Shown here in pieces: positions 14,981 to 57,258 of a DNA stretch of 64,000 nt; the first letter of the stretch is position 1, and each line of letters starts with the position of its first letter. The notes below the pieces were generated by a model. The model was given only the letters and a program-made list of their open reading frames with translations, did not search any database and was not told the DNA's origin. Position numbers and translations under genes: made by a program. Origin of the DNA: Chara braunii (Eukaryota > Plantae > Charophyceae); the NCBI GenBank assembly GCA_003427395.1, contig BFEA01000001.1, positions 13,528,967 through 13,592,966 on the forward strand, written 5' to 3'.

Positions 14981-15587
14981 TGTCCTCTATCTCACTCCAG
15001 TGAACCGGTTCTAAAAGCATTCCACCAGTTCAGCTGTGGCTACTTTCACCGCTTCACGCCTAATTCACCGCCTACGTGTGCTCAAAATTCCATAGATAAG
15101 TAACATGACAGTGACATTTATAAGAAAGATTTCTGGAAAGATGGCTAAAAAATCTTTGTCAAACATGGAGGTACACAATATAGCAATCACAGGAAAGAGT
15201 AAATAATATAGCAATCACACGAAAGAGTAAATAATATAGCAATCACAGTCAGGAGCATACATGAAATAGAGAGTAGCTTCTGGAAACATTGGTATTGAAA
15301 GGTCCAAGAAACAGACAGTGCGTCACCACCACAACCTGCTAGGATCTTCTCATCCTTCCTCCACGGAAAAAGAAAATAGATAGCATCACGGATTCACCGC
15401 ATGACAAAATCAGTACTACACATACCTGCATAAGCAATGTTCAATCAGCAGGAAACCACAGAAAAGTACGGCCACTCGCCCTAGCCAGCGACCGCAGAGC
15501 TGTTTGGGGCCCTCAGAAACTTTACGCAACCCATCTCATACAATTTTCCACGTAAAGAGTATGCATTTTTAGAGTATATATATATAT

Positions 15588-16055
15588 CGTCACAAACAGA
15601 ACTGCCCGGTAAACCGTTGGCAGAGAGAGAGAAGAGGACAACAAACGAGGGGCTGTGACAAACTGTTTCGTCGGAGTTTCACCGACTCATCAGGAGGCTG
15701 AACCCTCAACAGTCTGCAGAATCCCCTCACTGATTACACTGTAAATGATAATCTACCCTAACCAAAATCAAAGTAGACTGTCACTCACCCACACCAGATG
15801 GAAAACTCTACAGACTGTCGGTTCACACCCCATCACAAGCCAGCAAAACATCCACGAAACAAAGAAAGGTCTGTCACAGCCAAAAAATACACTCCAGACA
15901 CGCCGCTGGCACTAGAGGCACAGCATGGCCGCCTAGTATATATATCGTCAAATAGAACTGCCTACGGTAAACCGTAGGCAGAGAGGGAGAAGAGGACAAC
16001 AAACGAGGGGCTGTGACAAACTGTTTCGTCGGAGTTTCACCGACTCATCAGGGGG
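15588..16055 (-). mobile_element. Hammerhead-bearing non-autonomous retroelement (retrozyme/Penelope-like), 1.3 tandem units of ~358 nt in (TA)n
   Basis: Direct repeat 15588-15693 vs 15946-16055. (TA)n at both ends and at the internal junction. Intact type III hammerhead; no ORF in the supplied track. Confidence 0.8.
15659..15716 (-). ncRNA. Type III hammerhead ribozyme (intact core)
   Basis: Minus strand: CAGACUG-UU^-GAGG(GUUCAG)CCUC-CUGAUGA-GUCGG(UGAAACU)CCGAC-GAAA-CAGUUUG. All three stems pair. Predicted cleavage is after GUU, between 15708 and 15707. Confidence 0.9.
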
Positions 16056-16969
16056 TATATATATAGTATGCATTTATTGAAATAGTTAATAGTTATTTAA
16101 TAGTTATTTCTTTGCCCGATATCATACAGTTACAATGCTGGCAAGTCTCATCGAGTGTCTCCAACCACTCTGGTCAGACCTCTACGAAGAAATATGGTGG
16201 TAGACATGCTAATTGTACACAATTTCCCAAAGCTAATATATAAGTAAATCTTCTAGATGCTGTGTGATGTTGGGGTTGGGTGGATCCAGCATACCAGCGT
16301 ACTAGGGCACCCTTCTGCTGGTCACATAAGAAAGGAGGAATCGTCTGAAGCATTGCAAAACCAAAATTATCGCCCACTATTGGTCTTGAAGTAGGACCGA
16401 TCTACTGAAGGTGAGAGGGAGGCCCATTAGACAGGTCCAGTCTATTGGTGGGCAGCTTCACCTGCCGGGAAACTGGCCCAGCGTCCCATGTGCAATATTG
16501 GAGGGATTCAGGTTTCAGATCCCCACCCTTCTTCCTAGTTACATGTACCCTTTTGTTGCTTGTGGCTCCCTGCTTTCTTGACCTCCTGATAGCAACTTCC
16601 ATCCTCTCCACCCTGGGTGAGACTTGGGCTGCCTAAGTTAGACCGGGCATGCACAGGCTGCTCAGTTAGAACTTAGTAGGGCCATCGAACCCCGACTCAC
16701 CTACTGGGGATTGTTACTTCTTGCTTGGTGGTCCTGTAGGTTTGTTGATGGGTTTATTCATATTAGCCCTCGATCTCTAACTACAGGGGCATGTTCCTTA
16801 TTACATGATTGTCTTGTTGGTTTGCTGGTGGGCTTATATTTCCATTAGCCCTTGATCTCTTGTCACCAAGAGTTCTACCATATACCAACCCAGCTCAGAT
16901 ATCTCTTCGTCACACTCAAAATTGCTTGGACAATTCCTTCGTCACTCGACATATACCTTGATTGACTCG

Positions 16970-24600: not shown

Positions 24601-27600
24601 CTGCTGTGATCCGAAGTGATTTCCAAAAGTGCATGTGCAGTGTGAACGTCTGGTCGAAGGCTGGATCCGTGTGCTAACTCTGTTGGCTCATGGCTGCGAC
24701 CTACTACTAACATGCAAAGTGCTAACTCTGTTGGCTGTGTGTGCGTGGCTGCAACCTACTACTAACGTGCATGTGCAGTGCTAACTCTGTTGGCTGTGTG
24801 TGCATGGCCTCTGTCCTGCTGCGACCTACTAACGTGCATGTGCAGTGTGAACGTGTGGTCCGAGGCTGGGTCCATGTGCTAACTCTGTTGGCTCTGTGTG
24901 TGGCTGTGCCTCCGACAGAGATAGACGTCGAGAGGCAGGATGGAAATTAGCAGCAGGAGTAGGATATGCAGGGCGGGGTAGTCTGGAGCTCAGGGACAAA
25001 AGTAGAATTGGCAAAGACCTGGTAGGATTTTTTGACAACTTTCGTAGGCCCTGAGAACTGGTAAGGCTTAATGGGTACTTGTGGCATTCTGAGCCACACG
25101 GACCCCAGTTAGAGCCAACAAATAGGCAGGGTAGGCCTAAGGGACGACGGTTCAGATGAGGCCCAGATAGGCCAGGACCACGGCGGTTCAGGCAGGCCAG
25201 TGGTAGAGGCACAGGCCAACAGCCACAAGGCCGGTACCGCTCCAGCATAGGACCTACCGACGGCGCTGCAGAGGCTGCCGCATTTAGGCGCCAAATCCAG
25301 TTCGAATCTGGACCGTCGATTCAGATCAACCGTCCAGGCCGATAGGTACCAGCAGGTAGGAGGCCGGCCCAGCACTACAAAAGGCTGGGTACCAGCCTCA
25401 GTAGAGGTTAGAAGTTAGTACGGTTGGGTTAGTCTTCAGGATTAGCGCAGCGTTCCAGCGTTAGTACGATTAGCGCAGCGCTGCAGCATAGCGAGGAGCA
25501 GCGACGAGAGCAGGAGTTCAGCGGCAAGAGGATCAGCGCAGCGTTGGGCACAGCGCCAGTTGCCGGCCCAGCCCCCCTTGCAGCACCATAGCTACCGTGG
25601 CAGGTCTTCCTCCCTCTTCTTCCTCCACCGCTCTCTCTCTCTCTCTCTCTCTCCTCCTACCTTCTCAGTCTAAGGCTACTTCTGGGTTCTCGTACGGGAC
25701 TACTATGAGTATGAAAGATGGTTACGAATCCTGACGACATTGGAGACAGCAACATTGGGACTATAGGTTGACTACTTGTGGGATCTGATTTCATCTGCCT
25801 CTGGAGATGTATTTGACATTGTGAGATCGATATCTGAGACATTGTGGGACACTGTATTCGCAACATTTCGGATTCTCACCATCTCTGGCATTTCAAGATA
25901 CTATCTTGGAAACATCAAGTTGACGTCATCTTCCCTCTCCTCCTCCCTTCGTCTCTCTCCTCCCTCCATTCGTCCGTGGATGTTCTCAGACCCTGGCCTT
26001 TCGTCTGTGTCCAAGGCCAGGGCTTTCGCACCCCGATGAATGATTGAGAGTGTTCGATTGCAGTCCGAGTCAGGTCAGAGTCAGTCCATGTATCTCAAGA
26101 CTTCCGCTGTGATTGTATTTACTCTGCATTATCTGGTTGGTTCTGGGAATCTGCGCCATACTTATGACTGTGTTTCACGCGTATGCAACAGCACTCCAGT
26201 AGTCGCCAAAACGAGACGTGATTGCCCGCACCTAGTAGGGTACTAGGCTAGATACAGACCCTGAGGCCAAGTTGCAGGCTGAAATGGTGTTCCCTCCAAG
26301 AGGGACCTGGCGGGCCTCGTGCACCTAAGAGAGGCCGGGTAGTGCTGGGTGGCACCCGGCCAGAAGGTACCAGAGGCCAGGCAGCCGAAGTACATGAGAG
26401 AGCGTAGCGTGTACAATAGTACACTTCGGTTCAAACTTGCGCTTTATGCCGCTCCAACCACAGGGTGATGTTGGCAGAATACTTGAGGTGAGCTGGGGGG
26501 TGATGGTGAAGACCTCCGTCGCTATGGAGAATTGATCGAGAAGTGGTAGAGGTAGGCCTACGGAGGTGAGGGTGATGGACCTCTAGCCGGCTATGGTGGA
26601 CCATTAAAGGCAGGGGGAAGAAGGAGATGGGAACCGGGAAGGACACTAACCTTCAGACCATCTTCAGTCCCTTGCTTGGTGCTGCATCTAAAAGGCCCCT
26701 AACCAGGTACCAGCTAAGCTGGGACTTCATCCGAGAGTTTGGCAATGGCAGGTGGGGACTGGAGAGGCTGAGTAGAGTTTGCGTTGTCCTTTGACCATCC
26801 GTGATGCACATGGACGATCCGCCATTTACCTACCAAGGGCAGGCCAGTGAGGTTATGGCCGAAAGGAGGGCTCTTGTGTGTGCTGGCAGTAACGGGGAGT
26901 ACTTGCTGTCTAAGACAATGATGATGATGAGGGGGACGAGGGAGAGATGACATTGTTTTCCACTTGTGTTTATCTTCCTCTTCTATTGTTCATTCCCTCT
27001 TGTCATACTTCTGCTCTCAATCACTTCCATTTAAGTTGCAACGGAATGGCATTCTCTTTGTGAGCTCTTGCACTGGGAGATGACCAAGGATCATAGCAAT
27101 CGTTGCGACGATATCACTTACAGCGAGTGGAACAAGAAGAGGCCCGTATGACGAGCCAACCGATGCATCTGTCACCCCCACGAATCTTGAAGACAGACCA
27201 ACTTCCAACAATGGGTCCAAAGCTTGACTTTGAATAAATCCACTCAAAGTCAATGCTCTCTCCAAACCCTCCTTCGATTGCAAGCTGCCAGCCAGTGTCC
27301 CTAATCTCTGACAACAGTCATATGGTAGAGCACACACGACCAGCAATACATACACAGCCACACCAATCATCAATAAGACTGCTGCAGTCAGAAAGTCCTT
27401 GTACAGTCATGTATATAACACACACGACCAGCAATACATACACAGCCACACCAATCATCAATAAGACTGCTGCAGTCAGAAAGTCCTTGTACAGTCATGT
27501 ATATAAATACGTACATACTTGTATATCTAAAAATACGTCAAACAGAACTGACCGCTAAACCATTGGCAGAGAGGGAGAAGAGAACAACAAACGCAGGGCC

Positions 27601-30600
27601 ATAACAGAACTGCCCGGTAAATAGTAGGCAGAGAGGGAAAAGAGGAGGACAACAAACGAGGGGCTGTGACAGACTGTTTCATCGGAGTTTCACCGACTCA
27701 TCAGGATGTCGAACCCTCTGCAGTCTGCATAGTCCCCTAACCGGTGAGGCTGAACACACTACAGTCTGCAGTCCCCTAACTGATGATACTGATAAAAGCA
27801 TCAACGACTGCCTGTCAATTGCCACCCTGAGGTGGGAACCAACCACTGCGCTACCCTAAGGTGGGCACCAACCACTACCCTCAAGGTACCTGAGACGGAA
27901 ATCAAAGCAGACTATCGCTCACCGGCACCAGAAGGAAAACTCTACAGACTGCAGGTTCACACCCCATCATAACATAGCAAAACAGTGAAAACACCCACGA
28001 AACGGAGGTCAGTCACAGCCAGAAAATACACTCCAGACACACCGCTGGCACTAGATGCACAACACGACATGACCGCAGATTGATGGCCCCGATCGCTGCC
28101 GTTCCACCTGACCGGAGAAACCATAGCAGGGAGCTATCAAAGTCCAGAACTTTCTTCTTTCCGATCATCCATGTCCAAAGCAAGAAAGACGACTCACATC
28201 ATGTCAACCACAAATCCAGGTCCATGAATATATTCACTTACCTAAAACTACAATCATCATAGAAGCACATCACCTAGACATATCCTCTCTATGGAAAGCA
28301 GCACTATATAATGATGGAAATGCTCTCCCAACTTACAAACAAGCCATCTTTATATCGCATTTTCCCATTACTTTTCTCAATTAAAAATTTGGACCATTTC
28401 TCGATTTATGTATGTCATCCTTGGCGCAGCGGCCATGCTGATCTTCTCTCTCTGTATCGTTCCGATTTTAACGGATTTACCCAAGGACAGTTTCCCATTA
28501 CTATCTGTCCTGGTATCTGCTAATAACATATAGCCTGTTGCTTGCTATATTGCTGTTTTCCTTGTTTACTATCCTAGTTTGACTTCTCGTTGGCTGTTTT
28601 AGTCTTTTGGTATACTGTAGTTTTCCTCGTCCCTTGACATTCTAGTATGCTTTGGCACTGCCTTACTACTACCGTCTTCCCCCGAACATAACGCACCCTG
28701 ATAATGAATGTACACGAAACGTTTTCGGTCTGGTACAGCCATAAAGAGGGTGCATTGTGGTCGGGGGAAGAAGGTAGATTCTGCAGCTTTGCCTTGGAGC
28801 TCACCTTAGCGCTCAGCTCAGCATACGGGTCCACGCCGTAATGCTGGACAATACTCTCGAGGAAACAGTCCTGATATCCGATTGCCACTTGCTACAAACC
28901 TCTCCGGGAACAGACTGAACAAGAGCAGCTGGGCATTGCTCGTCTTGGGGCCATTTTCTATGTCCAGCTGATGTCTTATAGACACGAGGCAAATTTCGGA
29001 CGAGGGGACAGTTGGGGAAAGTGCACTGAGGATCACTTACGTGACAGGTGCTTCGATTGAAATTGGAAATTCCATCTTTTCTTGGGGTTCAGAGGGAGGG
29101 GGGAGGTTTGGGGGGGGGGAGGGGAGGGAGGAGGCGGGGAATGCAAGAAAAATGAAAGTGACGACATAGGCCAGAAACAGGTTGGAGATGGCTCTCATCC
29201 GGCCAGCAAGTCTCACGCTAAAGAAAAATTGCCTATTTTTGACAAATCTTCTCTCCCTTACAAATACGAAACGAGGTCATCCATCAAACATGCGTTCGTA
29301 CTTTGGGTATTCACAAAAAAAACGAATTTTGCAAGACCATCACCGTCATTGTGTTAATGTGTGGATTCCCTAATTGGAGCCACAAAAGATGTCAACAGGA
29401 GCTAGTGCCAGTGCAAGCCATTCGAAGTAGGAATAACTCAGGGCATACTCACACGGGGACCAAATGAACCAAAATCCCAAAATTTGAGGCATTTTTGTGG
29501 TCACACGGGGTTGGCCCTGTACCCAAATGCCTCAAATCGTGACCAAATGTCAGCGGCCTGCGAGGCCGCGGGGGTACCCTTTTTGAGACCACCTCCAGAG
29601 GTGGTCTCAAATGACCAAACGCTTTTTTCGTTTCCTTTCCTCAATTTGTAGAAAATCGTAGAAGAATAAGACAACCAGCCGAAGTTGTTTTTCTTTTCTT
29701 TTTTCTTTTTTTTCTTCTTCTTTTCTTTGGTGTCCCCTCGTGTGACCACACGACCTTGCCCTGAGTGCAAAGTGTCAGGGCTTATACACATCTAGATGTG
29801 TATAAGAGACAGCATTAGCGACCGCTACAGTACAAAGCAGATGAATCCAGAAAACCAGAAGACCGACTGTAAAATTGGAAAGATACAGAGAAGATTAGCA
29901 TGGCCCCTGCCCAAGGATGACACGCATAAATCGAGAAGGAAAGATTGAACCAACACGACAATTGAACCAACACGAAAACCAGAAAAGATCGACTGACGAC
30001 AAATCCGAAGGAAATGATTGCGCCCGCTACAGTACAAAGGAGATGAATCGAGAAAACAAAAAGACCGACTAAAACGAAACCAGAAGGAAATCATTGAACC
30101 AACACGAAAACCAGAAAAGATCGACTGACGACAAATCAGAAGGAAATGATTGAACCAACACAATAATTGAACCGACGCCGAAAAGGAGATCGTTTGGCAA
30201 ACCATGGTCGGAGCGTTTAACTAGATGAAAAAGACAAAGAGAAAAGGGTGGGGTGCTTGCATCGCGCCAGCTGATTGACCCAGTGGGCCTCAAGTCCATA
30301 CATTATGCATGGCCCGCAGAAATTTCCGCCGGCCGCCCAGTGGATGAAAAATTCAGGGGCTCCAAAAAAAAAAAAAAAAAAAAAAACAATTCACGGGCAA
30401 GGCGCGCGCGATTCCATCGCAGGCCTGTCTCACGGTGCTACCGTCGACACCAGCCGATGCTGAGGCACGGAATGGGGAGGACATGAACGGCTGCAAGCCG
30501 CAGCTGGGCATTTTGTAGGGATAGCTGCGCCCCCAATCCACCCCTCTAGAAAACGGCTCCTCGGAGTCGCTACTTCCGCTGGGAGAGAAAGAAATCTCGA

Positions 30601-33600
30601 AGAATTTTCTCGTCCACTTGCGCACTTCCGCTTTTTTCTAAGGCCACTGGCCGGCGTGAGGGAAAAGTAGAGCAATCCGCCGCTTGATTAGGAGGATGGA
30701 ACAAGGGACGTAGACTGGCAGGAAAGGAGAGGGGACGGGGAGAAGACCAATCCAAGCCAGTAATAGACGTGTATTACTAATTAAAAGGGAACTGCGACTG
30801 CACTTTACGCAGTGGAAGACAAATCAATGACAAAAAACTTAACCCAGTGTAAGACAAATCAATGACAGAGTGTTTCAACGATTGAGAAAGTGAAAAAGCG
30901 AGGAAACCCCATCAACGATCGACTGTTTTAAGGAGCTTCAGCGAACATCCGAAGGTGACTAATAAGGGATAATAATGGGAGTGAAAGAGAGCGATCAGTC
31001 GTCGCGATGATCTAACTGAGGGAGAATAAAAAAAGCCACCGAAAAGAAAAAGAACTCCCTGGGACCAAATCCATGATCGTGCTGTTTCAACGATAGATGA
31101 AGTGAACAACGTGGAAAGCTAGGCTACCAGAGTGGCCCGGGTCCACTTGCCCGGCCGGGCCAAAAAGCGAAAAAAAAAAAAACGATTTTTAAATTTAAAT
31201 TTTTATTCAAAATTTCAACGATTGGTTGTTTTGAAAAGCATCAGCGAAGATCCGAAGGTGAAAAACAAGCGATAATAATGGGAGGGGAAGCGATGAGTCG
31301 CGATGACTCGACTGATGGAGACAAGAAAAAGCCACCCACCACTCCCTAGGAGGGATCGTTAGACCTTCACTCACTTTATCTTTATCAGATTACAGAAGCA
31401 AAATCAACGCGGAGAGGAGGACGCTAGAGAGTCCGAAACGAAAAACATCCGAAACTACACTCGAACGACGAACAGAAAGATAGAGGGATAATCGGACTCT
31501 GCCCATCAAAGCCATAATACTACTGTAATAATCGTGGCTTACTGGGCACAAAAACTTTCCACTCACCGTCGATTCCGCACCGACGGGACTTCGCCGACAA
31601 CAGGGCTCTTGAATCGTAACCTCCCCTCCCGATCGAAGCACTCTGTTGAACTCGCTTAACAGGGGAGCAGTATGATGACCCGGAACCTCCGCAACGCTCA
31701 GAATCACATCCACGGACGACGATTCCAACGCGAGTTTCATGCCTGCGGCAGCAAGTCCACATACCGCCCAAAACCGCGCGCGCGAGCGCGCGGACACACA
31801 AACGCACATACCAGCCCGCACGTGAGCACCCAGAAACAATTGCAGATACAACGGCAAAGGCAGAGGGCTGGCGAGCGATACTCCGTAAGAGGGGAGGGGT
31901 CGTGGATGGGAAGAGAGGGGACACGCCAGAGTCAATCCAACATGCACCTGACAAAACTTGAATAAGCAGAAGCATGAAGAACGGTAAGTACTGCGGTCGC
32001 ACAGGCGGTCACACATGCTATCGATGCTAAACAACAACAATCTACATGCGATGCGATTGTGTGCCTGCACGACCGGTTACTCTTCCGTTTCTTCCGTCTG
32101 CTGTCCTCTCGAGAAGAAAAAAATTTGCGAAAAAAAACACAGAGCTCGTGCGAACACGGGCTCATTAAGTAGTATAGCAGTTCCTCACTCGGAGCAAGAT
32201 ATCGTACATCACACGGCATTCCAACTTTGAGTAAAGAAAAGAGCAAGGCTGTCGGCAAAGGGCAGGAGTGGGTCGGAGCTCCTGCAACTCCTACCTTCGA
32301 TACAACCATCCCAATCCTATTCAACATTCCAAATCATTGATCCATTCAAAGGACGCCTGCACGGCAAGGTTGGACGTCTCGGGATGATTTCAGACAAGCT
32401 CAACTCCTCCGCTAATCCTCCCGGACCAGCACCACCACCTCTGCTGTTGTCGCCCTCACCAACGAACCAAAACACCATAGCAAAAGACATCTCGCACATC
32501 ATCGCCCCCCCCCCATTGTCAATTGCAACCCTTTTATATTTAGCAAGCAATCTTAGGACGCCCGCACGCACGCCATCGTCATCACCCGACCCCCCCCCCA
32601 CACTTTCCTTACGGGAAAATCATCACCGCCCCCCCACACACTTTTCCTAACGAGAAATTTATTTCAAAAACTCAAGATCCGCCCACATTATAAACAAACA
32701 TTCAACCCAACCCCTCACCTTGACTTTATCTCCCCTCTTCGCCCTTGATTTCCGAAAATCACGCGTTCTACGAGCTTCAGCGACCACTCTACAGACGGAT
32801 GAGCTACCGCGCCAAACACTAAATCCGTCGAAGGAATTCAATTTGGATTACACACCAAACCCATTACGGCAAAGTACATGCGCGATTAGATCGATCACCA
32901 TCTGACTGGGGCGACCACTGCTCGCTTGCTAATTGGCATCATTTCTTCAACCCCCCTCATAGTCGCTCTTCTTGGTCGATTGATTAGCAACTGATCGATC
33001 AGCACTCACTCCCATTGACTAATCAATCGTTCTGATCAGCACTCACTCCCATTGACTAATCAATCGTTTCGCTCACCTCGACATAGATCGATCCATCGCC
33101 AACTCCTTGGGCCCACTAAAGAAACCGAGCTGGTCAATCAGTTACTCGTCGTAATCAATTGCTCGCCGTAATCAATCCGACCGTCATCGCCCAATGGACT
33201 GCGTCCATTACTCGGTCGTCTTGAACGCCGTTTGATAATCGCTTGCTGAATTGACAGCTCGCCTAATCCATACGCGCCGTAATCTTTCATAAGACCCGCC
33301 GTTTGATAATCGCCTGCTGCATTTACTGCTCCCCTACGTCTGTCTATCGCGGACGTCGATTAAACTAATCCATTCGCACCATAACCTTTCATAAGATCCG
33401 TCGGACAACAGATACCCCGATCCTCCCCACCTCGTCAGTTAGTTAAACAACCAATCAGTCAAGCAATCATAGCCAATCGAGCTTCCATCAATCTGCGAAA
33501 CAATCAAGCCGACCGACCACGTTCAGCATTTCAAATGACAGACTGTACAAGCATTCAGTTTGTCGTTCGTTTCCCAAGCCGATTAATCATCTTTCAGTTT

Positions 33601-40654: not shown

Positions 40655-41690
40655 GAGTATACGTGATTAGTAGATTGACTCGTACTGGAGTCTCCTACCA
40701 CTTGTTCAACACCAGACAATCCATATTTGAATAAGTAGTTAAATAACTCATACTGGAGTATCTAACTACCATTTCAATACCAGTCAATCCACACGTATAC
40801 AAATAGTAGGATAAACACAAGCGAAATAATATATATATGTGTGTTTTTCAGACAAGTAGTAGGATCACTCAGACTGGAGTATCCCACTACCTTTTTAAAG
40901 TAAACGAACAGTAAAACAACTCACACTCGAGTACCCCGCTATTTGTTTAGTTTCCAACAACTAAACCACATCACACAAATTAGTGTAGACTTCAAGGTAG
41001 TAATAGGATGACTATCACAAAAACTCCCTACTACTTCTTGAACACTGCGCAACTTAACTTCAAACAAGTAATAGGATGATAATTACATGAGTTTTCTACT
41101 TATTTTTTTAATATCGCACAGACTCACTTCAAACAAGTAATAAGATTATTTGAAGTTAGTAATAGGATTACTATCACATGGGCTCACTACTACCTCTTGA
41201 ACACTACACAACTTAACTTCAAACAAGTAATAGGACGACCCTTACAAAAGTTTCCTACTACCTTTTGAATATCCAGCAGGCTAATTTCAAACGAGTAATA
41301 GGATGACCCCACAAGAGTCTCCTACTACCTGTTCGAGCGGATTATATGTAAGCAAGCATAAAATCAGAAGTAGGATGACTCACATAGGAGTATCCTAACC
41401 TTTTTTTCATAGTCAGTTAATTTAGATTCAAAACGACAATAGGTCGACCCTCACTAGAGTCACCTACTATCTTTTGAATATAGCATAGTCTGACTTAAAC
41501 AAGTAATATGAGGACTCACACAAAAATATCTCACCACTCGTTCAGTCCAAATGATTTAGACTTAGACAAGCAATAGGATGACCCACACATGGGTCCTCCA
41601 CATCCCGTCTGTCAATCTAGCAATCTAAGATATGTATACATGTACAAATGAGTAAGAGGATGTCCCTCTCACTGGAGCCTTATCCCATCA
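40655..41690. repeat. Degenerate ~60-bp tandem array of hairpin units
   Basis: Approximate consensus AAACAAGTA.TAGGATGACTCACACTGGAGTATCCTACTACC repeated more than 12 times. Confidence 0.8.
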
Positions 41691-41752: not shown

Positions 41753-41784
<32 letters not shown>

Positions 41785-44412
41785 AACAATTCGAAAAAAT
41801 ATGACAAAATATATATATATATATATATATATAAACAATTCGAAAAAATATGACAGTTTCAGTGAAAAATCCGTCGAAAATGACACCACCTATTAACCAT
41901 AATCAGCATTCATACATTAACCTGATATAAAGCAATTGATGGTAGTACAAACGAGGTGCATAAGATAGGAATGAGAAAAAAATCGCCTACCTCAAGGTTC
42001 CCGGACTCCAGAGTTCCTTCTGAACTCTAGCAGAGCTCCCGCAATTGATGGGCAACATGAAGTCCCGCTAGATACAACCTTAGTATGGTTTGATCAGAGT
42101 GACATTCTGCCAATTATTTTTTCATCAGAGAAGCCTTACAGATAATTAAAGAGGTTTGAAGAATAATAAAATACAACTCTTAAAATGGGGGAGGGATCAC
42201 TCAATAAATAACATAGGAGACATTTAACGTTTTTTGTCATGAGGGCGTAAAAATGACAGTCAACCGTTATTAGCGGCTCGAAACTTGCATTCTTCTTTAC
42301 ATCCCTTCCCCTTCTTTCCCTCTCCCTTCTTCCTCTGCATGGTCGCCATTCCTACCTCCACACCCTTTTTCCCTGATGCCCCTCGCTCACTTATCCATTC
42401 TTCCGTACTCGTATCCTTCAAGCCTGTACCATGCGCGTTCGTCTTCAATGTTAAAGAAAGGGGGAATAATGCCAGGAATACGAGTGAGAGCGACAGACAA
42501 AAATCCAAATTGCAAAAATCACGAAGTAGCCCAGATAATCATGTACCCAGCAGAGAGCTCAATGCACCAAGATACCATCCAAAGAAGAGCAATACAATAA
42601 ACTCAAACATCAATGCGGACGACTCTGACCACACCAACATAGTATCCAATGTCGCTCCTCCCGATTGACGTTCAATGCCCACTCTACTCTACTCAACCTA
42701 TCCACACTTATCTACGTTTATGCAACTGTATCACATTGAAGTTGAAGACCAATGCACGTGACGTCACCACTAATGCAGGTCGTCAACGTACACCATGTAC
42801 ATTCCTTTCTCCTCTATCCTTCACAAACACATACATACCTCTTCTTGTAAGAGGCTTATAAATGATAGTCTACTAAGATCGCAAGGTTTGCATGAGTAAA
42901 ATCTACAACTTTTCTCAAAGGTATCTTTAGACTTTGGGCGACATAGTGAGTGGTGAGTCCTTATTCATCAGTCAAATGCATTCCTCGGCAGACTGTCTGT
43001 CCAGGTTCAACATCTGATATGTCAACGAAAATCCTATGAATCGTTCTGACACATTCATGTTTTTTTCTGTGGAGTTGTGTATAGTGGTCATGATAAGACA
43101 CACACACATATACACGCACACAAACACTTACTAATGAGAATCTCATTGTCCCTACCTATCATCAGATTGGACCCATAAAAAAACAGAGGTAGAAAAAGGA
43201 ATCGTGTCGAACTCGACTGTGATTTTATTTTCTGAAATGACGTGAGAGATGTACAATAAGTGAAAAACTTACGAAGCATGTACGTACTTTAGAACAACCA
43301 GGAGGATACGCACATGAAGCCAAGTTGGCCTCTCTCTCTTGTCTCTTCCTCCTCTTTCTTCCTTATTATGTGGATGCATTCTCTTTCTCCAACACGTGAT
43401 CGTTTTTTCATTTTCTGTGCACATTGTTATTTTCTGTCTCCACTCGGTTATCCTCATCCTCAACACTTGCCTAACTGTACTTTTGTCTCTTTTCTCGTGA
43501 TATTTCCTCCATTTTCAAGCTCGACTTCATTCTCCTCTTCGTGAGCCCATTTCTTTCAACCTCCATGTACATGCTCTCCTTTATCTCCTAAGTGTATGTC
43601 CTCTTGTTGTTTGCCCCTACGCTATCCTTTCTTATTATTTCTGCCCCACTTATCTCCTTCACTTACGTTCGTTGTTTTTTTCCCCCCTTTTCTTTGCCTT
43701 CATCATACTCGTTTTTTTCTTATTGGATCGACCAGCAATGATGGTCAAATTTCGTATGCATCTGACCACAATAACGTTCACATACTTGAGAAATAATAAT
43801 AGTAAAAAATATAATAATAAAAAAATAAAATGAATAACAAAATCAGCATCACTCATGATAGGTATTGTGATCATGATCATACTCGGGTGAGGCCATAATT
43901 GGGATGACATCGATTTCGGTTTGGAACATAATCTATTTTGTCAGAGACTCGGATTATAACGAAGATAACTATGTCACCTAACAATATATAAACAACGCGA
44001 AAAATCAAATAATAAAAATGAATGTATACAAATTATATTTATGGTCCAATTCATTTATAATAAGGGTGTTATGTATTCAAAAACGGTGTCATTCACGAGT
44101 AAGTTTGCTCATTGATTTCCTCGAATTCGCTCCTACCTTTTTCTTCTTCTGTCTTTTGCCACCCTCGACATTTATTTTTCCTCTTCTTTTTCTTCACCGT
44201 TCGCTCTACCTTCGTCCCCCCTCTCCTTCTTTCTCCACTTCTTCCTCCTTTGCTCCTCGTGTTCAACATCGTTGTCCTCTTGTCGTTCGTCACTCACATC
44301 TCCTTTAGTGCATATTTTGTCTCATTGAATACTTCTTCTTCCCACATGCACTTTAATTCCCGATCATTTGCTTCTCCTCCTTTCGTGCCTTCATGCTCTC
44401 ATACAAGAGGTG

Positions 44413-55712: not shown

Positions 55713-56214
55713 AAGGAAAGAGAAATTAAAAACAAAGGGGGGGGGGGGGAGAAGAATACCATCCTAAATGGACGGGATGCAACGAACGTGCATTTCATAA
55801 GGAGCACTGATCAAGTACATCCGACTCTTTGAATGTCTAGGAGAGCACATAGCAGCGTTTTTAAGTCGTTATTGAAAAGATGCAGCCAGAGATTTCGGGA
55901 TTCTACTGCTGATGACGCTATGCATGCGCTTGACCCATGACCGGACGCAAAGAAGGGAGTGCAATCAGTGGAAAGGAAGTAAGCAGCAGCAGCAGCAGCA
56001 GGAGGAGGAGGAGGAGGAGATGGAAATGTGAAGAAGAAAATGATTGTCGATTGACATGTAGATGTCGTCGATCGGTCATGGTGAACATGGAGATCGAGGA
56101 GAGTTGGTGCAAGTGCAAAGGGAGGGCTACGTGTATAAGATGAGGGCAAGGCCAGATGGCCCCTAAATGCTCAGTGGGTGGTCGAGTTCCGGTGGCCGAA
56201 AGGCAATATCAGGA

Positions 56215-56278
56215 GCATGCGATTATCCTCCTGATGATGCCGAAGAGCACCCGGTGGAAACATGTAGAGGACGTGTGC
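56215..56278 (+). ncRNA. Type I hammerhead ribozyme with minimal palindromic stem III (Penelope-type)
   Basis: GCAUGCG-auua-UCCUC-CUGAUGA-UGCCG(AAGAGCACC)CGGUG-GAAA-CAUG-UA^-GAGGA-CGUGUGC. Stem I has 5+7 bp around a bulge; cleavage triplet GUA. Confidence 0.8.
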
Positions 56279-57258
56279 ACGGTATTGGAGTGTGAAAACA
56301 CGGTTGTATGATCGGACTTGTTATACTAGTAATACATTTGCAATTGCCTGTGCAGAGCAAAGAGCAATTGGCCATTGCTTGTCATTCTTCTTCCTTCTGC
56401 GTTATTGCCGTGTCACTCTTGTTCCTTTCTGCATTATTGCAGTGTGTCTATTGCCGTCTCTCTGTATCACTCGATTCTGTACTTCACCCTTCAGGAGAAG
56501 GCAGGCCCGACACGGCAAGCCTGTATCCAATGGCCGTTCAAACCATCAGTACACGGCCCCAGCCTTGTGGAAAGAACTCGTCGCCACGGAATTCAAATTT
56601 CGGGCCCGTCCAGGCCACGGAATTCAAATTCCGGGCCCGTGCGGGACGGGGCGCGGCTTGGTGGGGCAGGGCTTGGTGGGGCGGGGCAGGCGAGGCACCG
56701 TAGATAATCAAATTGGCGTCCCCCCGAAGCGGCACCGGCATCAGCCTGACACCCACGGCCGATGTATGGGTGTGGGTGTACTGCCGGTTTTACGGACTTC
56801 CTCTCCTCTGCGTCTGCAGCGGCGACGGATTCCTACCTCCTTACCTTTTTCATGGATCGCATGTGCAGTTCCACCTTGGAAAAAACTGCAGCATTGACAT
56901 CCTGTGCCCGTCGAGTCTGTGTTTGATTGACATACAGACACTCTTGGCTGTGAATGCCGTTGTCTTTCTTTTCCGATATTGTTATGACTGGATTGTATCA
57001 TCATCGTGGCGCGTGTTGTGTTTCCTCACTGTTTGCATCCTGACCATATTTAGTGGCAGGTCCGGTTTGGCATGCAGGATTTTATAGAACGTCATGGCCC
57101 ATTGTTGGACTCTGTTGTTCTCAACTGCGAACAACATGCACTTCGGTAATTGCTCTTCGCTGGCATGGGTAATCATGAAGTGGGTTGGAACGGCGATTCA
57201 GTACGATTTTGAATAAAAACTCTCTCTCGCTCTCTCATATACGTACATCATGTCGTTT

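What the first reader, a model, noticed from the sequence alone, without database searches (positions are those of the whole stretch)
15588..16055. Small (TA)n-bounded retrozyme-like element: 358-nt unit with a type III hammerhead in partial+full tandem arrangement
Seen: an intact type III hammerhead (15659-15716, minus) inside a 358-nt unit with no evident ORF. A partial copy of the unit's 3' end lies upstream on the minus strand, and its 5' end stops ~10 nt short of the predicted cleavage site. (TA)n occurs at both outer ends and at the unit junction. A perfect hairpin CTGCCTACGG-TAAA-CCGTAGGCAG lies near the 3' end, and a second family member lies 12 kb away. Established: plant retrozymes with type III hammerheads are typically larger LTR-type elements with PBS/PPT, whereas short tandem retrozymes and Penelope pseudo-LTRs usually carry type I hammerheads; Naiad/Chlamys Penelope-like elements insert into microsatellites as partial+full tandems. 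Inference: this element pairs type III chemistry with Penelope-like architecture. It may move through a ~358-nt self-cleaved, probably circular RNA primed at its (UA)n tract on genomic (TA)n and copied for more than one round. It may be an undescribed family.
Basis: partly seen in the sequence, partly recalled or inferred. Interest (0 to 1): 0.9.

Follow-up and report, generated by a model that had tools for sequence, protein, structure and literature searches.

The report
Hammerhead-ribozyme retroelement copies in Chara
Two stacked, truncated copies of a very abundant non-coding jumping element of the stonewort alga Chara braunii, whose RNA carries a self-cutting hammerhead ribozyme hidden inside a long viroid-like hairpin; it is an algal variant of known ribozyme-bearing retroelements, not a new kind of system.

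Summary
A type III hammerhead lies at 15660-15715 (minus strand): Rfam 45.8 bits, just under the 48.5 cut-off, E 1e-8. Its repeat has a 358-nt period, and a 111-nt tail-only copy upstream starts 10 nt after the cleavage site. (TA)n sits at all three junctions, and a decayed relative lies at 27.5-28.1 kb.

The window is Chara braunii. This scan has flagged the same family many times on other DNA of this genome.

New findings here:
- The "358-nt unit" is itself 5'-truncated, because other copies run on upstream.
- An exact 11-nt direct repeat brackets the whole composite, outside the (TA)n tracts. This looks like the target duplication of target-primed reverse transcription, not of an LTR integrase.
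- The RNA folds into an 89-bp rod (z -9; 18 G·U pairs against 1 A·C mismatch). The rod buries the ribozyme, at a cost of +38 kcal/mol to form the active fold.
- DNA depth suggests roughly 10^4-10^5 copies. RNA reads are strand-biased and enriched 3' of the cut site.

A circular RNA and multi-round copying are not shown, and this locus cannot release a unit-length RNA. The likely mobiliser is one of the hammerhead-bearing Penelope-like elements reported in this alga, but I could not test that link. Verdict: new variant of a known kind.

The parts
16065..16075 (-). Upstream copy of the 11-nt direct repeat AAATGCATACT (a target-site-duplication candidate; about 16 nt if two mismatches are allowed)
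   Evidence: There are exactly two exact copies in the 64 kb, both on the minus strand and both just outside the outer (TA)n tracts.
16056..16064 (.). (AT)4A tract between the flanking repeat and the partial copy
   Evidence: Read directly.
15945..16055 (-). Tail-only (5'-truncated) copy. It holds the ribozyme core without the cleavage site or the helix III 5' strand, then the pyrimidine-rich tail and the terminal GACGA.
   Evidence: 93% identical to the main copy over 121 nt. Rfam scores it only 22 bits. Alignment.
15958..15981 (-). Perfect 10-bp hairpin with a UUUA loop; this form is a minority variant of the family's 3' tail hairpin
   Evidence: In one search table 4, 2 nt are 'left out' at 15963 in 646 of 707 RNA reads and in 70% of the DNA depth laid at that place.
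15937..15944 (.). (TA)4 junction between the two copies
15587..15936 (-). Main copy (350 nt), itself 5'-truncated relative to the family
   Evidence: DNA contigs of other copies run on beyond 15937/15938 into sequence that matches copy 2 upstream (table 7).
15651..15881 (-). Long imperfect RNA hairpin (rod) of 89 bp. Its 5' arm is a G·U-rich mirror of the ribozyme arm and acts as an 'anti-ribozyme'.
   Evidence: MFE -159.1 kcal/mol, z -9.15, against -91.1, z -2.8 for the opposite strand. 18 G·U pairs against 1 A·C mismatch. The active hammerhead fold costs +38 kcal/mol when the arm is present and about 0 when it is absent.
15658..15717 (-). Type III hammerhead ribozyme; predicted cut after GUU, between 15708 and 15707
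   Evidence: Rfam RF00008, 45.8 bits, E 1.1e-8; fold.
15602..15623 (-). Tail hairpin in the family's majority form (8 bp with a bulge)
15575..15586 (.). 3' (TA)6 tract after the terminal GACGA
   Evidence: This is the constant end of genomic copies (tables 5 and 5c).
15558..15568 (-). Downstream copy of the 11-nt direct repeat AAATGCATACT
27540..28110 (-). Second, older family member. It has internal duplications, a dead ribozyme (GUU changed to GCA) and extra 5' sequence.
   Evidence: The rod is largely kept, with two double-sided compensatory changes.

Best explanation
The locus holds two dead, stacked copies of a very abundant non-coding retroelement family of Chara braunii: a 350-nt 5'-truncated copy and, upstream of it, a 111-nt tail-only copy.

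The family's RNA is the window's minus strand. It consists of a leader, a roughly 230-nt G·U-rich rod, a pyrimidine-rich tail with a small hairpin, and a terminal GACGA(UA)n. The 3' arm of the rod holds a type III hammerhead.

Inferred mechanism. A reverse transcriptase supplied in trans copies the RNA into DNA by target-primed reverse transcription, starting from the (UA)n end. The most likely source is one of the hammerhead-bearing Penelope-like (Chlamys or PLE-X) elements reported in this alga. The process leaves a long target duplication, 11 nt here, and frequent 5' truncation.

Copies pile up head to tail with short (TA)n between them. Either the enzyme jumps from one RNA to the (UA)n end of another within one event, or later insertions land in the (TA)n left by earlier ones.

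The 5' arm of the rod keeps the ribozyme folded away in full-length RNA. RNAs that lack that arm fold the ribozyme and are cut at GUU|G. This would yield the very common tail-only copies and could trim read-through or multimeric transcripts. Release and circularisation of a unit-length RNA from true dimers is possible but not shown.
For: Organism: a window exon is 100% identical to Chara braunii protein CBR_g263.

Ribozyme.

Retroelement anatomy:
- The 3' end is constant and the 5' ends vary. In the DNA run, many joints run from different 5' truncation points back to 15575 with 2-12 nt of TA between them (tables 5 and 5c).
- Summed contig depth is about 2.6 million over the 3' part, about 1.1 million over the 5' part, and about 16-40 in unique flanks (table 2).
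- That fits three copies in this 64-kb window.

Target duplication: an exact 11-mer occurs only at the two flanks.

Non-coding; no transposon protein domain in 109 ORFs.

Selection on RNA structure:
- z -9.15 on the sense strand against -2.8 on the antisense strand.
- 18 G·U pairs against 1 A·C mismatch, where neutral decay of an inverted repeat predicts about 1:1.
- Copy 2 compensates on both sides at the two pairs that involve the cleavage site.

Ribozyme masking: +38 kcal/mol with the arm, 0.1 without it.

RNA:
- 6227 of 8.9 million oligo-dT reads map, against 0-3 reads in the flanks.
- There is a 5:1 strand bias in the orientation expected for ribozyme-sense RNA.
- RNA per unit of DNA depth is about 7 times higher 3' of the cut site than 5' of it (table 2).

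Literature:
- Chlamys-2_cBra has a canonical 3' hammerhead.
- A second PLE type in C. braunii also has one.
- Non-autonomous Chlamys derivatives form pseudo-LTRs and head-to-tail insertions.
- Naiad and Chlamys elements favour microsatellites (PMC8557442).
Against: - No autonomous partner was examined.
- No pile of read ends was reported at the cleavage site (table 6).
- 61% of what was laid from the RNA run continues into unrelated sequence, so much of the RNA signal may be passive read-through of embedded fragments.
- Antisense reads are also 3-4 times enriched over the 3' part.
- The ribozyme scores below Rfam's curated threshold, and its activity is untested.
- Depth sums are not true copy numbers.
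- Published Chlamys elements prefer (CA)n or (C)n, not (TA)n.
Confidence: 0.6

Rival explanations
1. A unit-length, self-cleaved and circularised RNA is the template. It is primed at its internal (UA)n on genomic (TA)n and copied for more than one round, giving the partial+full tandem in one step. This would be a retrozyme in the strict sense.
For: - A single 11-nt flanking repeat encloses the whole composite.
- The partial copy begins only 10 nt after the cleavage site.
- The RNA is rod-like, as retrozyme and viroid circles are.
- A 456-nt metatranscriptome contig has the same 30 nt at both ends, which gives a 426-nt cyclic path. A second study shows the same tail-to-head junction (table 8).
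Against: - The upstream copy has no cleavage site, so this locus cannot give a unit-length RNA.
- The main copy is 5'-truncated, so the 358-nt period is not the family's unit.
- The two copies differ at 5 or more sites in 111 nt, including a 2-nt marker that most reads and contigs laid at that place lack (table 4).
- An extra (AT)4A lies 5' of the partial copy.
- A cyclic assembly path arises from genomic tandem repeats or DNA carry-over just as well as from a circle.
- The raw reads were oligo-dT selected, and no back-joint was seen that is absent from DNA.
Confidence: 0.2
2. A SINE-like element mobilised by a non-Penelope partner, for example a LINE that ends in or targets (TA)n. In this reading the hammerhead is a passenger or a processing signal.
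For: - 5' truncation, a long target duplication and a simple-repeat tail are equally typical of LINE-driven retroposition.
- Published Chlamys elements prefer (CA)n or (C)n rather than (TA)n (PMC8557442).
- Two U6 pseudogene-like copies lie beside copy 2. Retro-copied U6 is a known by-product of LINE-type machinery; that point is my own knowledge.
Against: - In eukaryotic retroelements, hammerheads are so far tied to Penelope-like elements and retrozymes.
- Penelope-like elements with canonical hammerheads are reported in this very species.
- No LINE with this tail is known to me, and none could be tested here.
Confidence: 0.13
3. A plant-type LTR retrozyme or a solo LTR of one.
For: The hammerhead is type III, as in plant retrozymes, and the host is a streptophyte.
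Against: - There is no pair of full LTRs and no internal region.
- There is no tRNA-Met primer site within the element or its flanks.
- The flanking repeat is 11 nt, not 4 bp.
- 5' ends vary while the 3' end is constant.
- The element ends in (TA)n rather than TG..CA.
Confidence: 0.02
4. A DNA-level repeat. Read on the plus strand it could be a Helitron-type element, starting TC, ending CTAG and lying between A and T. Alternatively it could be a plain satellite.
For: - On the plus strand the main copy starts TCGTC after an A and ends CTAG before a T.
- Helitrons can form tandems.
Against: - Other copies continue past the 'CTAG' end into conserved family sequence, so that end is not a terminus (table 7).
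- A flanking 11-nt duplication is present, whereas Helitrons make none.
- The structure signal is specific to one RNA strand.
- The hairpin would sit at the wrong (5') end for a Helitron.
Confidence: 0.03

Closest known systems
Hammerhead-bearing Penelope-like elements of Chara braunii (Chlamys-2_cBra and the EN-less PLE-X type) and the non-autonomous Chlamys derivatives such as MRC1 of Chlamydomonas (Craig et al. 2021, PMC8557442)
   Same: - Same host species.
- The hammerhead lies near the 3' end.
- 5' truncation, partial tandems or head-to-tail insertions, and association with microsatellites.
- Very high copy number.
   Different: - This family is short and non-coding.
- It associates with (TA)n rather than (CA)n or (C)n.
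- It has a long anti-ribozyme rod.
- Sequence identity of its tail to those elements could not be tested here.
- The paper's main text does not state the hammerhead type or describe short derivatives in Chara.
Metazoan non-LTR retrozymes (Cervera and de la Peña 2020, PMC7229834; Li et al. 2026 preprint, 10.64898/2026.07.22.740005)
   Same: - Non-coding repeats of 150-450 nt with one hammerhead per unit.
- No LTR, PBS or PPT, and target duplications larger than 4 bp.
- The RNA is highly self-paired.
- They are proposed to be non-autonomous derivatives of Penelope-like elements.
   Different: - Those carry type I hammerheads, occur in animals and form long tandem arrays that are expressed as proven circular RNAs.
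- Here the hammerhead is type III and the host is a streptophyte alga.
- Copies here are mostly dispersed, truncated or stacked, and circles are not shown.
Plant LTR retrozymes (Cervera et al. 2016, PMC4918200)
   Same: - Type III hammerhead in the green lineage.
- Non-coding.
- The RNA is structured, with the ribozyme masked.
   Different: Plant retrozymes have two LTRs of about 350 bp, PBS and PPT, 4-bp duplications, circles of 600-1000 nt and Gypsy-type mobilisation. None of these features is present here.
Hammerhead viroids (Avsunviroidae) and viroid-like satellite RNAs
   Same: - Similar size (about 350-430 nt).
- A rod in which the hammerhead is paired with a complementary segment and is inactive at equilibrium.
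   Different: - Viroids are not encoded in the host genome and carry ribozymes in both polarities.
- Here the element is genomic, at very high copy number, with a ribozyme in one polarity only.

Membership tests
Hammerhead ribozyme, type III (Rfam RF00008) | Conserved core (CUGAUGA, GAAA, NUH cleavage triplet) with helices I and II closed by loops and helix III open | tested here: met
   Alignment to the covariance model over positions 1-54 of 54. The minimum-energy fold of the 66-nt RNA forms the three helices. The triplet is GUU.
Hammerhead ribozyme, type III (Rfam RF00008) | Score at or above Rfam's gathering threshold (48.5 bits) | tested here: not met
   45.8 bits, and absent from the gathering-threshold scan. 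The shortfall is small, and E is 1.1e-8 in the local search.
Hammerhead ribozyme, type III (Rfam RF00008) | Self-cleavage at the predicted site | not testable with these tools
   Indirect evidence only: a step in RNA depth at the site but no pile of read ends (tables 2 and 6).
Plant LTR retrozyme | Two LTRs, each with a hammerhead, flanking an internal region with PBS and PPT | tested here: not met
   The arrangement is a 111-nt partial copy plus a 350-nt copy, with only (TA)4 between them. No tRNA-Met PBS lies near the element.
Plant LTR retrozyme | 4-bp target site duplication | tested here: not met
   The flanking direct repeat is 11 nt.
Non-LTR retrozyme (as defined in metazoans) | Short non-coding repeat unit (150-450 nt) with one hammerhead, arranged head to tail | tested here: met
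   The period is 358 nt here. Many head-to-tail joints appear in the DNA run (tables 5 and 5c). No ORF exceeds 59 aa.
Non-LTR retrozyme (as defined in metazoans) | Type I hammerhead | tested here: not met
   The topology is type III.
Non-LTR retrozyme (as defined in metazoans) | Expressed as a unit-length, highly self-paired circular RNA | tested here: inconclusive
   Self-pairing is strong. A 426-nt cyclic assembly path appears in a metatranscriptome (table 8), but tandem DNA would explain it equally well. The raw reads are oligo-dT selected.
Non-autonomous derivative of a Penelope-like (Chlamys/PLE-X) element | 3' end shared with an autonomous RT-encoding Penelope-like element | not testable with these tools
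   There is no RT in the window. The consensus sequences of PMC8557442 are not held. The collections available here do not contain Chara.
Non-autonomous derivative of a Penelope-like (Chlamys/PLE-X) element | [quoted passage not shown] | tested here: met
   (depth profile and joints); for this locus.
Non-autonomous derivative of a Penelope-like (Chlamys/PLE-X) element | Insertion bias for microsatellites | tested here: inconclusive
   (TA)n lies at every junction. At this locus, though, the tracts sit inside the 11-nt flanking repeat, so they may be the element's own tail rather than a pre-existing target.
Helitron | Conserved 5' TC and 3' CTRR termini, a 3' subterminal hairpin, insertion between A and T without target duplication | tested here: not met
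   The family continues past the putative CTAG end (table 7). A flanking duplication is present. The hairpin would lie at the 5' end in that orientation.

The most novel reading that the evidence does not exclude
Chara braunii may carry, at roughly 10^4-10^5 copies, a viroid-like RNA of about 420 nt. It would be a G·U-rich rod with a single-polarity type III hammerhead held off by a built-in anti-ribozyme arm. It would be released from dimers, circularised, and retrotransposed by Penelope-like enzymes. That would be a type III, Penelope-dependent 'non-LTR retrozyme' in the sister lineage of land plants. It would bridge animal non-LTR retrozymes (type I) and plant LTR retrozymes and viroids (type III).
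Probability: 0.25. Interest if true: 0.75.

Novelty: new variant of a known kind. Interest (0 to 1): 0.5.

Why it matters
- Evolutionary link. De la Peña and co-workers proposed that retrozymes, and ultimately hammerhead viroids, descend from Penelope-like elements (PMC5680766). A streptophyte alga with a type III hammerhead in a Penelope-style, non-LTR, rod-shaped element is the kind of intermediate that idea predicts.
- Ribozyme control. The strand-specific, G·U-rich anti-ribozyme arm is a clean natural example of a hammerhead switched off by its own transcript. It gives a simple bench test: the truncated RNA should cleave and the full RNA should not.
- Annotation. The family makes up a noticeable share of a 2-Gb genome. 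It seeds (TA)n tracts, and its fragments are present in poly(A)+ RNA.
- Limits. The individual locus is dead, and the general class is already described.

Tried and rejected
- Rfam at gathering threshold found no hammerhead. Only the permissive local search did.
- A metagenome scan with the 29-nt ribozyme core returned two phage-like contigs. They carry a bona fide but unrelated type III hammerhead (53.6 bits) that shares only the consensus core.
- A family-specific 26-mer gave nothing in the viral or prokaryote genome collections.
- I looked for a reverse-transcriptase seed in the window, to reach Chara Penelope-like loci. 109 ORFs of 85 aa or more gave no transposon domain.
- The supplementary files of Craig et al. 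are not held for the journal version. For the preprint they contain only machine-read protein alignments, so the published hammerhead and tail sequences could not be compared.
- No convincing flanking duplication was found for copy 2.
- Common family variants at paired positions mostly keep pairing, but only 5 of them were informative, which is not significant.
- The Helitron and LTR-retrozyme readings were considered and rejected (see the rival explanations).
- An alleged type I hammerhead at 56120-56335 has no Rfam match at E <= 1.

Full report
**What is there**

All element coordinates below are read on the minus strand.

The region reads, from upstream to downstream:
- an 11-mer, AAATGCATACT (16075-16065)
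- (AT)4A (16064-16056)
- a 111-nt partial copy (16055-15945)
- (TA)4 (15944-15937)
- a 350-nt copy (15936-15587)
- (TA)6 (15586-15575)
- six bases
- the same 11-mer again (15568-15558)

The repeat period is 358 nt.

Rfam's type III hammerhead model matches 15715-15660 over its full length at 45.8 bits, E 1.1e-8. That is 2.7 bits below the curated threshold, so the whole-window gathering scan lists only two U6-like hits. The core, the three helices and a GUU triplet are intact, with the cut predicted between 15708 and 15707. The isolated 66-nt RNA folds into the hammerhead as its minimum-energy structure.

The upstream copy begins 10 nt after the cleavage site. It lacks the site and scores 22 bits.

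A third, older copy lies at about 28110-27540. It has a mutated triplet (GCA), internal duplications and a duplicated tail.

Nothing longer than 59 aa is encoded.

**Whose genome**

An exon at 31393-32070 is 100% identical to 'hypothetical protein CBR_g263 [Chara braunii]', an anamorsin homologue. Earlier notes of this scan had named the same alga. They record that the same hammerhead family was flagged many times on other pieces of this genome.

**Family-level evidence from public reads**

DNA run of the same organism:
- Summed contig depth is about 2.3-2.6 million over the part 3' of the ribozyme, and about 1.1-1.5 million over the 5' part.
- Depth in the unique flanks is 16-42.
- These sums are not copy numbers, but they point to the order of 10^4-10^5 copies. 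That agrees with three copies in this 64-kb window.
- The 3' end is constant, near 15575.
- 5' ends are scattered. Many joints link a truncation point (15601, 15639, 15658, ... 15705/15706, 15744, 15838, 15907) back to another copy's 3' end, with 2-12 nt of TA between them (tables 5 and 5c).
- Contigs of other copies run on beyond 15937/15938 into a consensus that matches the sequence upstream of copy 2 (table 7). The '358-nt unit' is therefore a 5'-truncated copy, not the complete element.
At 15963, 2 nt are absent from 91% of the RNA reads and 70% of the DNA depth laid there (table 4).

**A flanking duplication**

AAATGCATACT occurs exactly twice in the window, once at each outer flank and on the same strand. 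With two mismatches the repeat extends to about 16 nt.

This is the signature of target-primed reverse transcription, as in LINE-, SINE- or Penelope-type elements. It does not fit an LTR integrase (4-6 bp) or a Helitron (none).

All three (TA)n tracts lie inside this duplication. At this locus they therefore seem to have been brought in with the element's (UA)n tail, rather than being a pre-existing microsatellite target.

**One event or two**

- For one event: there is a single duplication around the composite, and the partial copy starts close to the cleavage site.
- For two templates: the copies differ at 5 or more positions in 111 nt, including the 2-nt marker that most reads and contigs laid at that place lack. 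The main copy is also truncated exactly at the junction, and an extra (AT)4A precedes the partial copy.
- Two readings fit all of this. The first is one integration in which the enzyme jumped from the 5' end of one RNA to the (UA)n end of another. The second is successive insertions into the (TA)n left by an earlier, possibly tail-only, insertion. I cannot tell these apart.
- Rolling copying of one circular template fits less well.

**RNA structure**

- The 362-nt sense RNA folds at -159.1 kcal/mol, z -9.15, with no shuffle as good.
- The opposite strand gives -91.1 kcal/mol, z -2.8.
- The core is an 89-bp rod (15881-15651). In it the hammerhead arm pairs with an upstream mirror segment.
- The rod has 18 G·U pairs against a single A·C mismatch. 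Neutral decay of an inverted repeat should give these in about equal numbers, so the binomial probability is about 4e-5. This indicates selection on the RNA of the ribozyme strand.
- Copy 2 keeps 73 of the 89 pairs. It changed both partners at the two pairs that involve the cleavage site.
- Forcing the active hammerhead fold costs +38 kcal/mol in the 362-nt RNA. It costs about 0.1 kcal/mol in RNAs that start at or below 15790.
- The upstream arm is therefore an anti-ribozyme. Another first-stage note on this stretch suggested this, and the energies here bear it out.

**Expression**

- In an oligo-dT RNA run of the same species, 6227 reads map out of about 8.9 million sampled. The flanks get 0-3 reads.
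- Reads whose first mate lies on the plus strand outnumber the others by about 5:1. In the usual stranded libraries that means RNA of the minus strand, which is the ribozyme strand. DNA carry-over alone would give 1:1.
- Sense-strand RNA depth per unit of DNA depth is about 700 (arbitrary units) from 15606 to 15683. It is about 100 from 15710 upward, with the step at the cleavage site.
- Several things weaken this. No pile of read ends was reported there (table 6). Antisense reads show a 3-4-fold step as well. And 61% of what was laid runs on into unrelated sequence, so much of the RNA is probably element fragments embedded in other transcripts.
- Two metatranscriptomes from different studies (soil and rice paddy) contain contigs in which the tail is joined to the element's start through 67-68 other letters. 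One 456-nt contig carries the same 30 nt at both ends, which is a cyclic path of 426 nt (table 8).
- That path could be a circular RNA, a transcribed tandem array or DNA carry-over.

**Comparison with the literature**

- Craig et al. 2021 (PMC8557442) report very abundant Chlamys Penelope-like elements in C. braunii.
- One type (Chlamys-2_cBra) has 'a canonical 3'-HHR', and a second, endonuclease-less type also has canonical hammerheads.
- The same paper describes pseudo-LTR partial tandems, microsatellite targeting ((TA)n for Naiads, (CA)n or (C)n for Chlamys), and non-autonomous derivatives with head-to-tail insertions in Chlamydomonas.
- Animal non-LTR retrozymes are 150-450-nt tandem units with type I hammerheads. 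They are expressed as self-paired circles (PMC7229834) and are argued to derive from Penelope-like elements (preprint 10.64898/2026.07.22.740005).
- Plant retrozymes carry type III hammerheads but are LTR elements with PBS and PPT and 4-bp duplications. No PBS is present here.
- The Chara family thus combines the plant-type ribozyme topology with the animal and Penelope-type architecture.
- I found no paper describing this short family or its anti-ribozyme rod.
- I could not test the key membership feature, a 3' end shared with an RT-encoding element. The window has no RT, the published consensus sequences are not held, and the searchable collections do not contain Chara.

**Verdict**

The locus is a pair of dead copies of a real, very abundant, non-autonomous hammerhead retroelement.

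The specific claims are not supported at this locus. These are a 358-nt unit, a circle made here, multi-round copying, and priming on a pre-existing (TA)n.

I class it as a new variant of a known kind. The most interesting parts are the strand-specific anti-ribozyme rod and the possible evolutionary bridge between Penelope-dependent and plant retrozymes.

Noticed in passing
window 28383-28490 (-) and 29845-29952 (+): Two U6 snRNA-like sequences score 69-71 bits and carry insertions and substitutions, so they look like pseudogenes. One lies about 270 nt upstream of hammerhead-element copy 2, on the same strand. They could be retro-copies made by the same machinery, but I did not analyse this.
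   Followed up: no
L002 3440-3494 (+) and L001 8195-8250 (-), metagenome contigs Ga0114903_1000585 and Ga0114902_1000484: A bona fide type III hammerhead (53.6 bits) sits between two small ORFs of a phage-like contig. Its 29-nt core and helix II are identical to the Chara ribozyme, with no other similarity. Identity of the core alone is therefore not evidence of kinship.
   Followed up: partly
window 55900-56600: Another first-stage note claims a type I hammerhead at 56120-56335. An Rfam search of both strands at E <= 1 finds no hammerhead there.
   Followed up: partly
window 15720 (table 7, run X18): A soil metatranscriptome contig joins an Illumina adapter end directly to position 15720, 12 nt upstream of the predicted cleavage site. 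This hints at a recurrent fragment end there. It is unexplained.
   Followed up: no
window 15450-15527 and 16126-16200: Both flanks of the composite have DNA depths of 750 to 23,000, against 16-42 for the unique stretches beside them. The insertion therefore sits inside or next to other, less abundant repeats.
   Followed up: no
window 41756-41855 and 40850-41604: The unit (TA)n followed by AAACAATTCGAAAAAATATGACA occurs twice, 49 nt apart. Next to it lies an array of roughly 68-nt repeats. This may be another simple-repeat-associated element.
   Followed up: no
window 31393-32070 (-): An exon of the Chara braunii anamorsin homologue (CBR_g263), 100% identical over the aligned part. I used it to identify the organism.
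   Followed up: yes
window 27690-27780 (-): Copy 2 carries an internal duplication of the left half of the hammerhead (helix III and helix I strands) and a 62-nt duplication of the tail. A metatranscriptome contig (run X18) shows the same kind of insertion, so a longer subfamily exists.
   Followed up: partly
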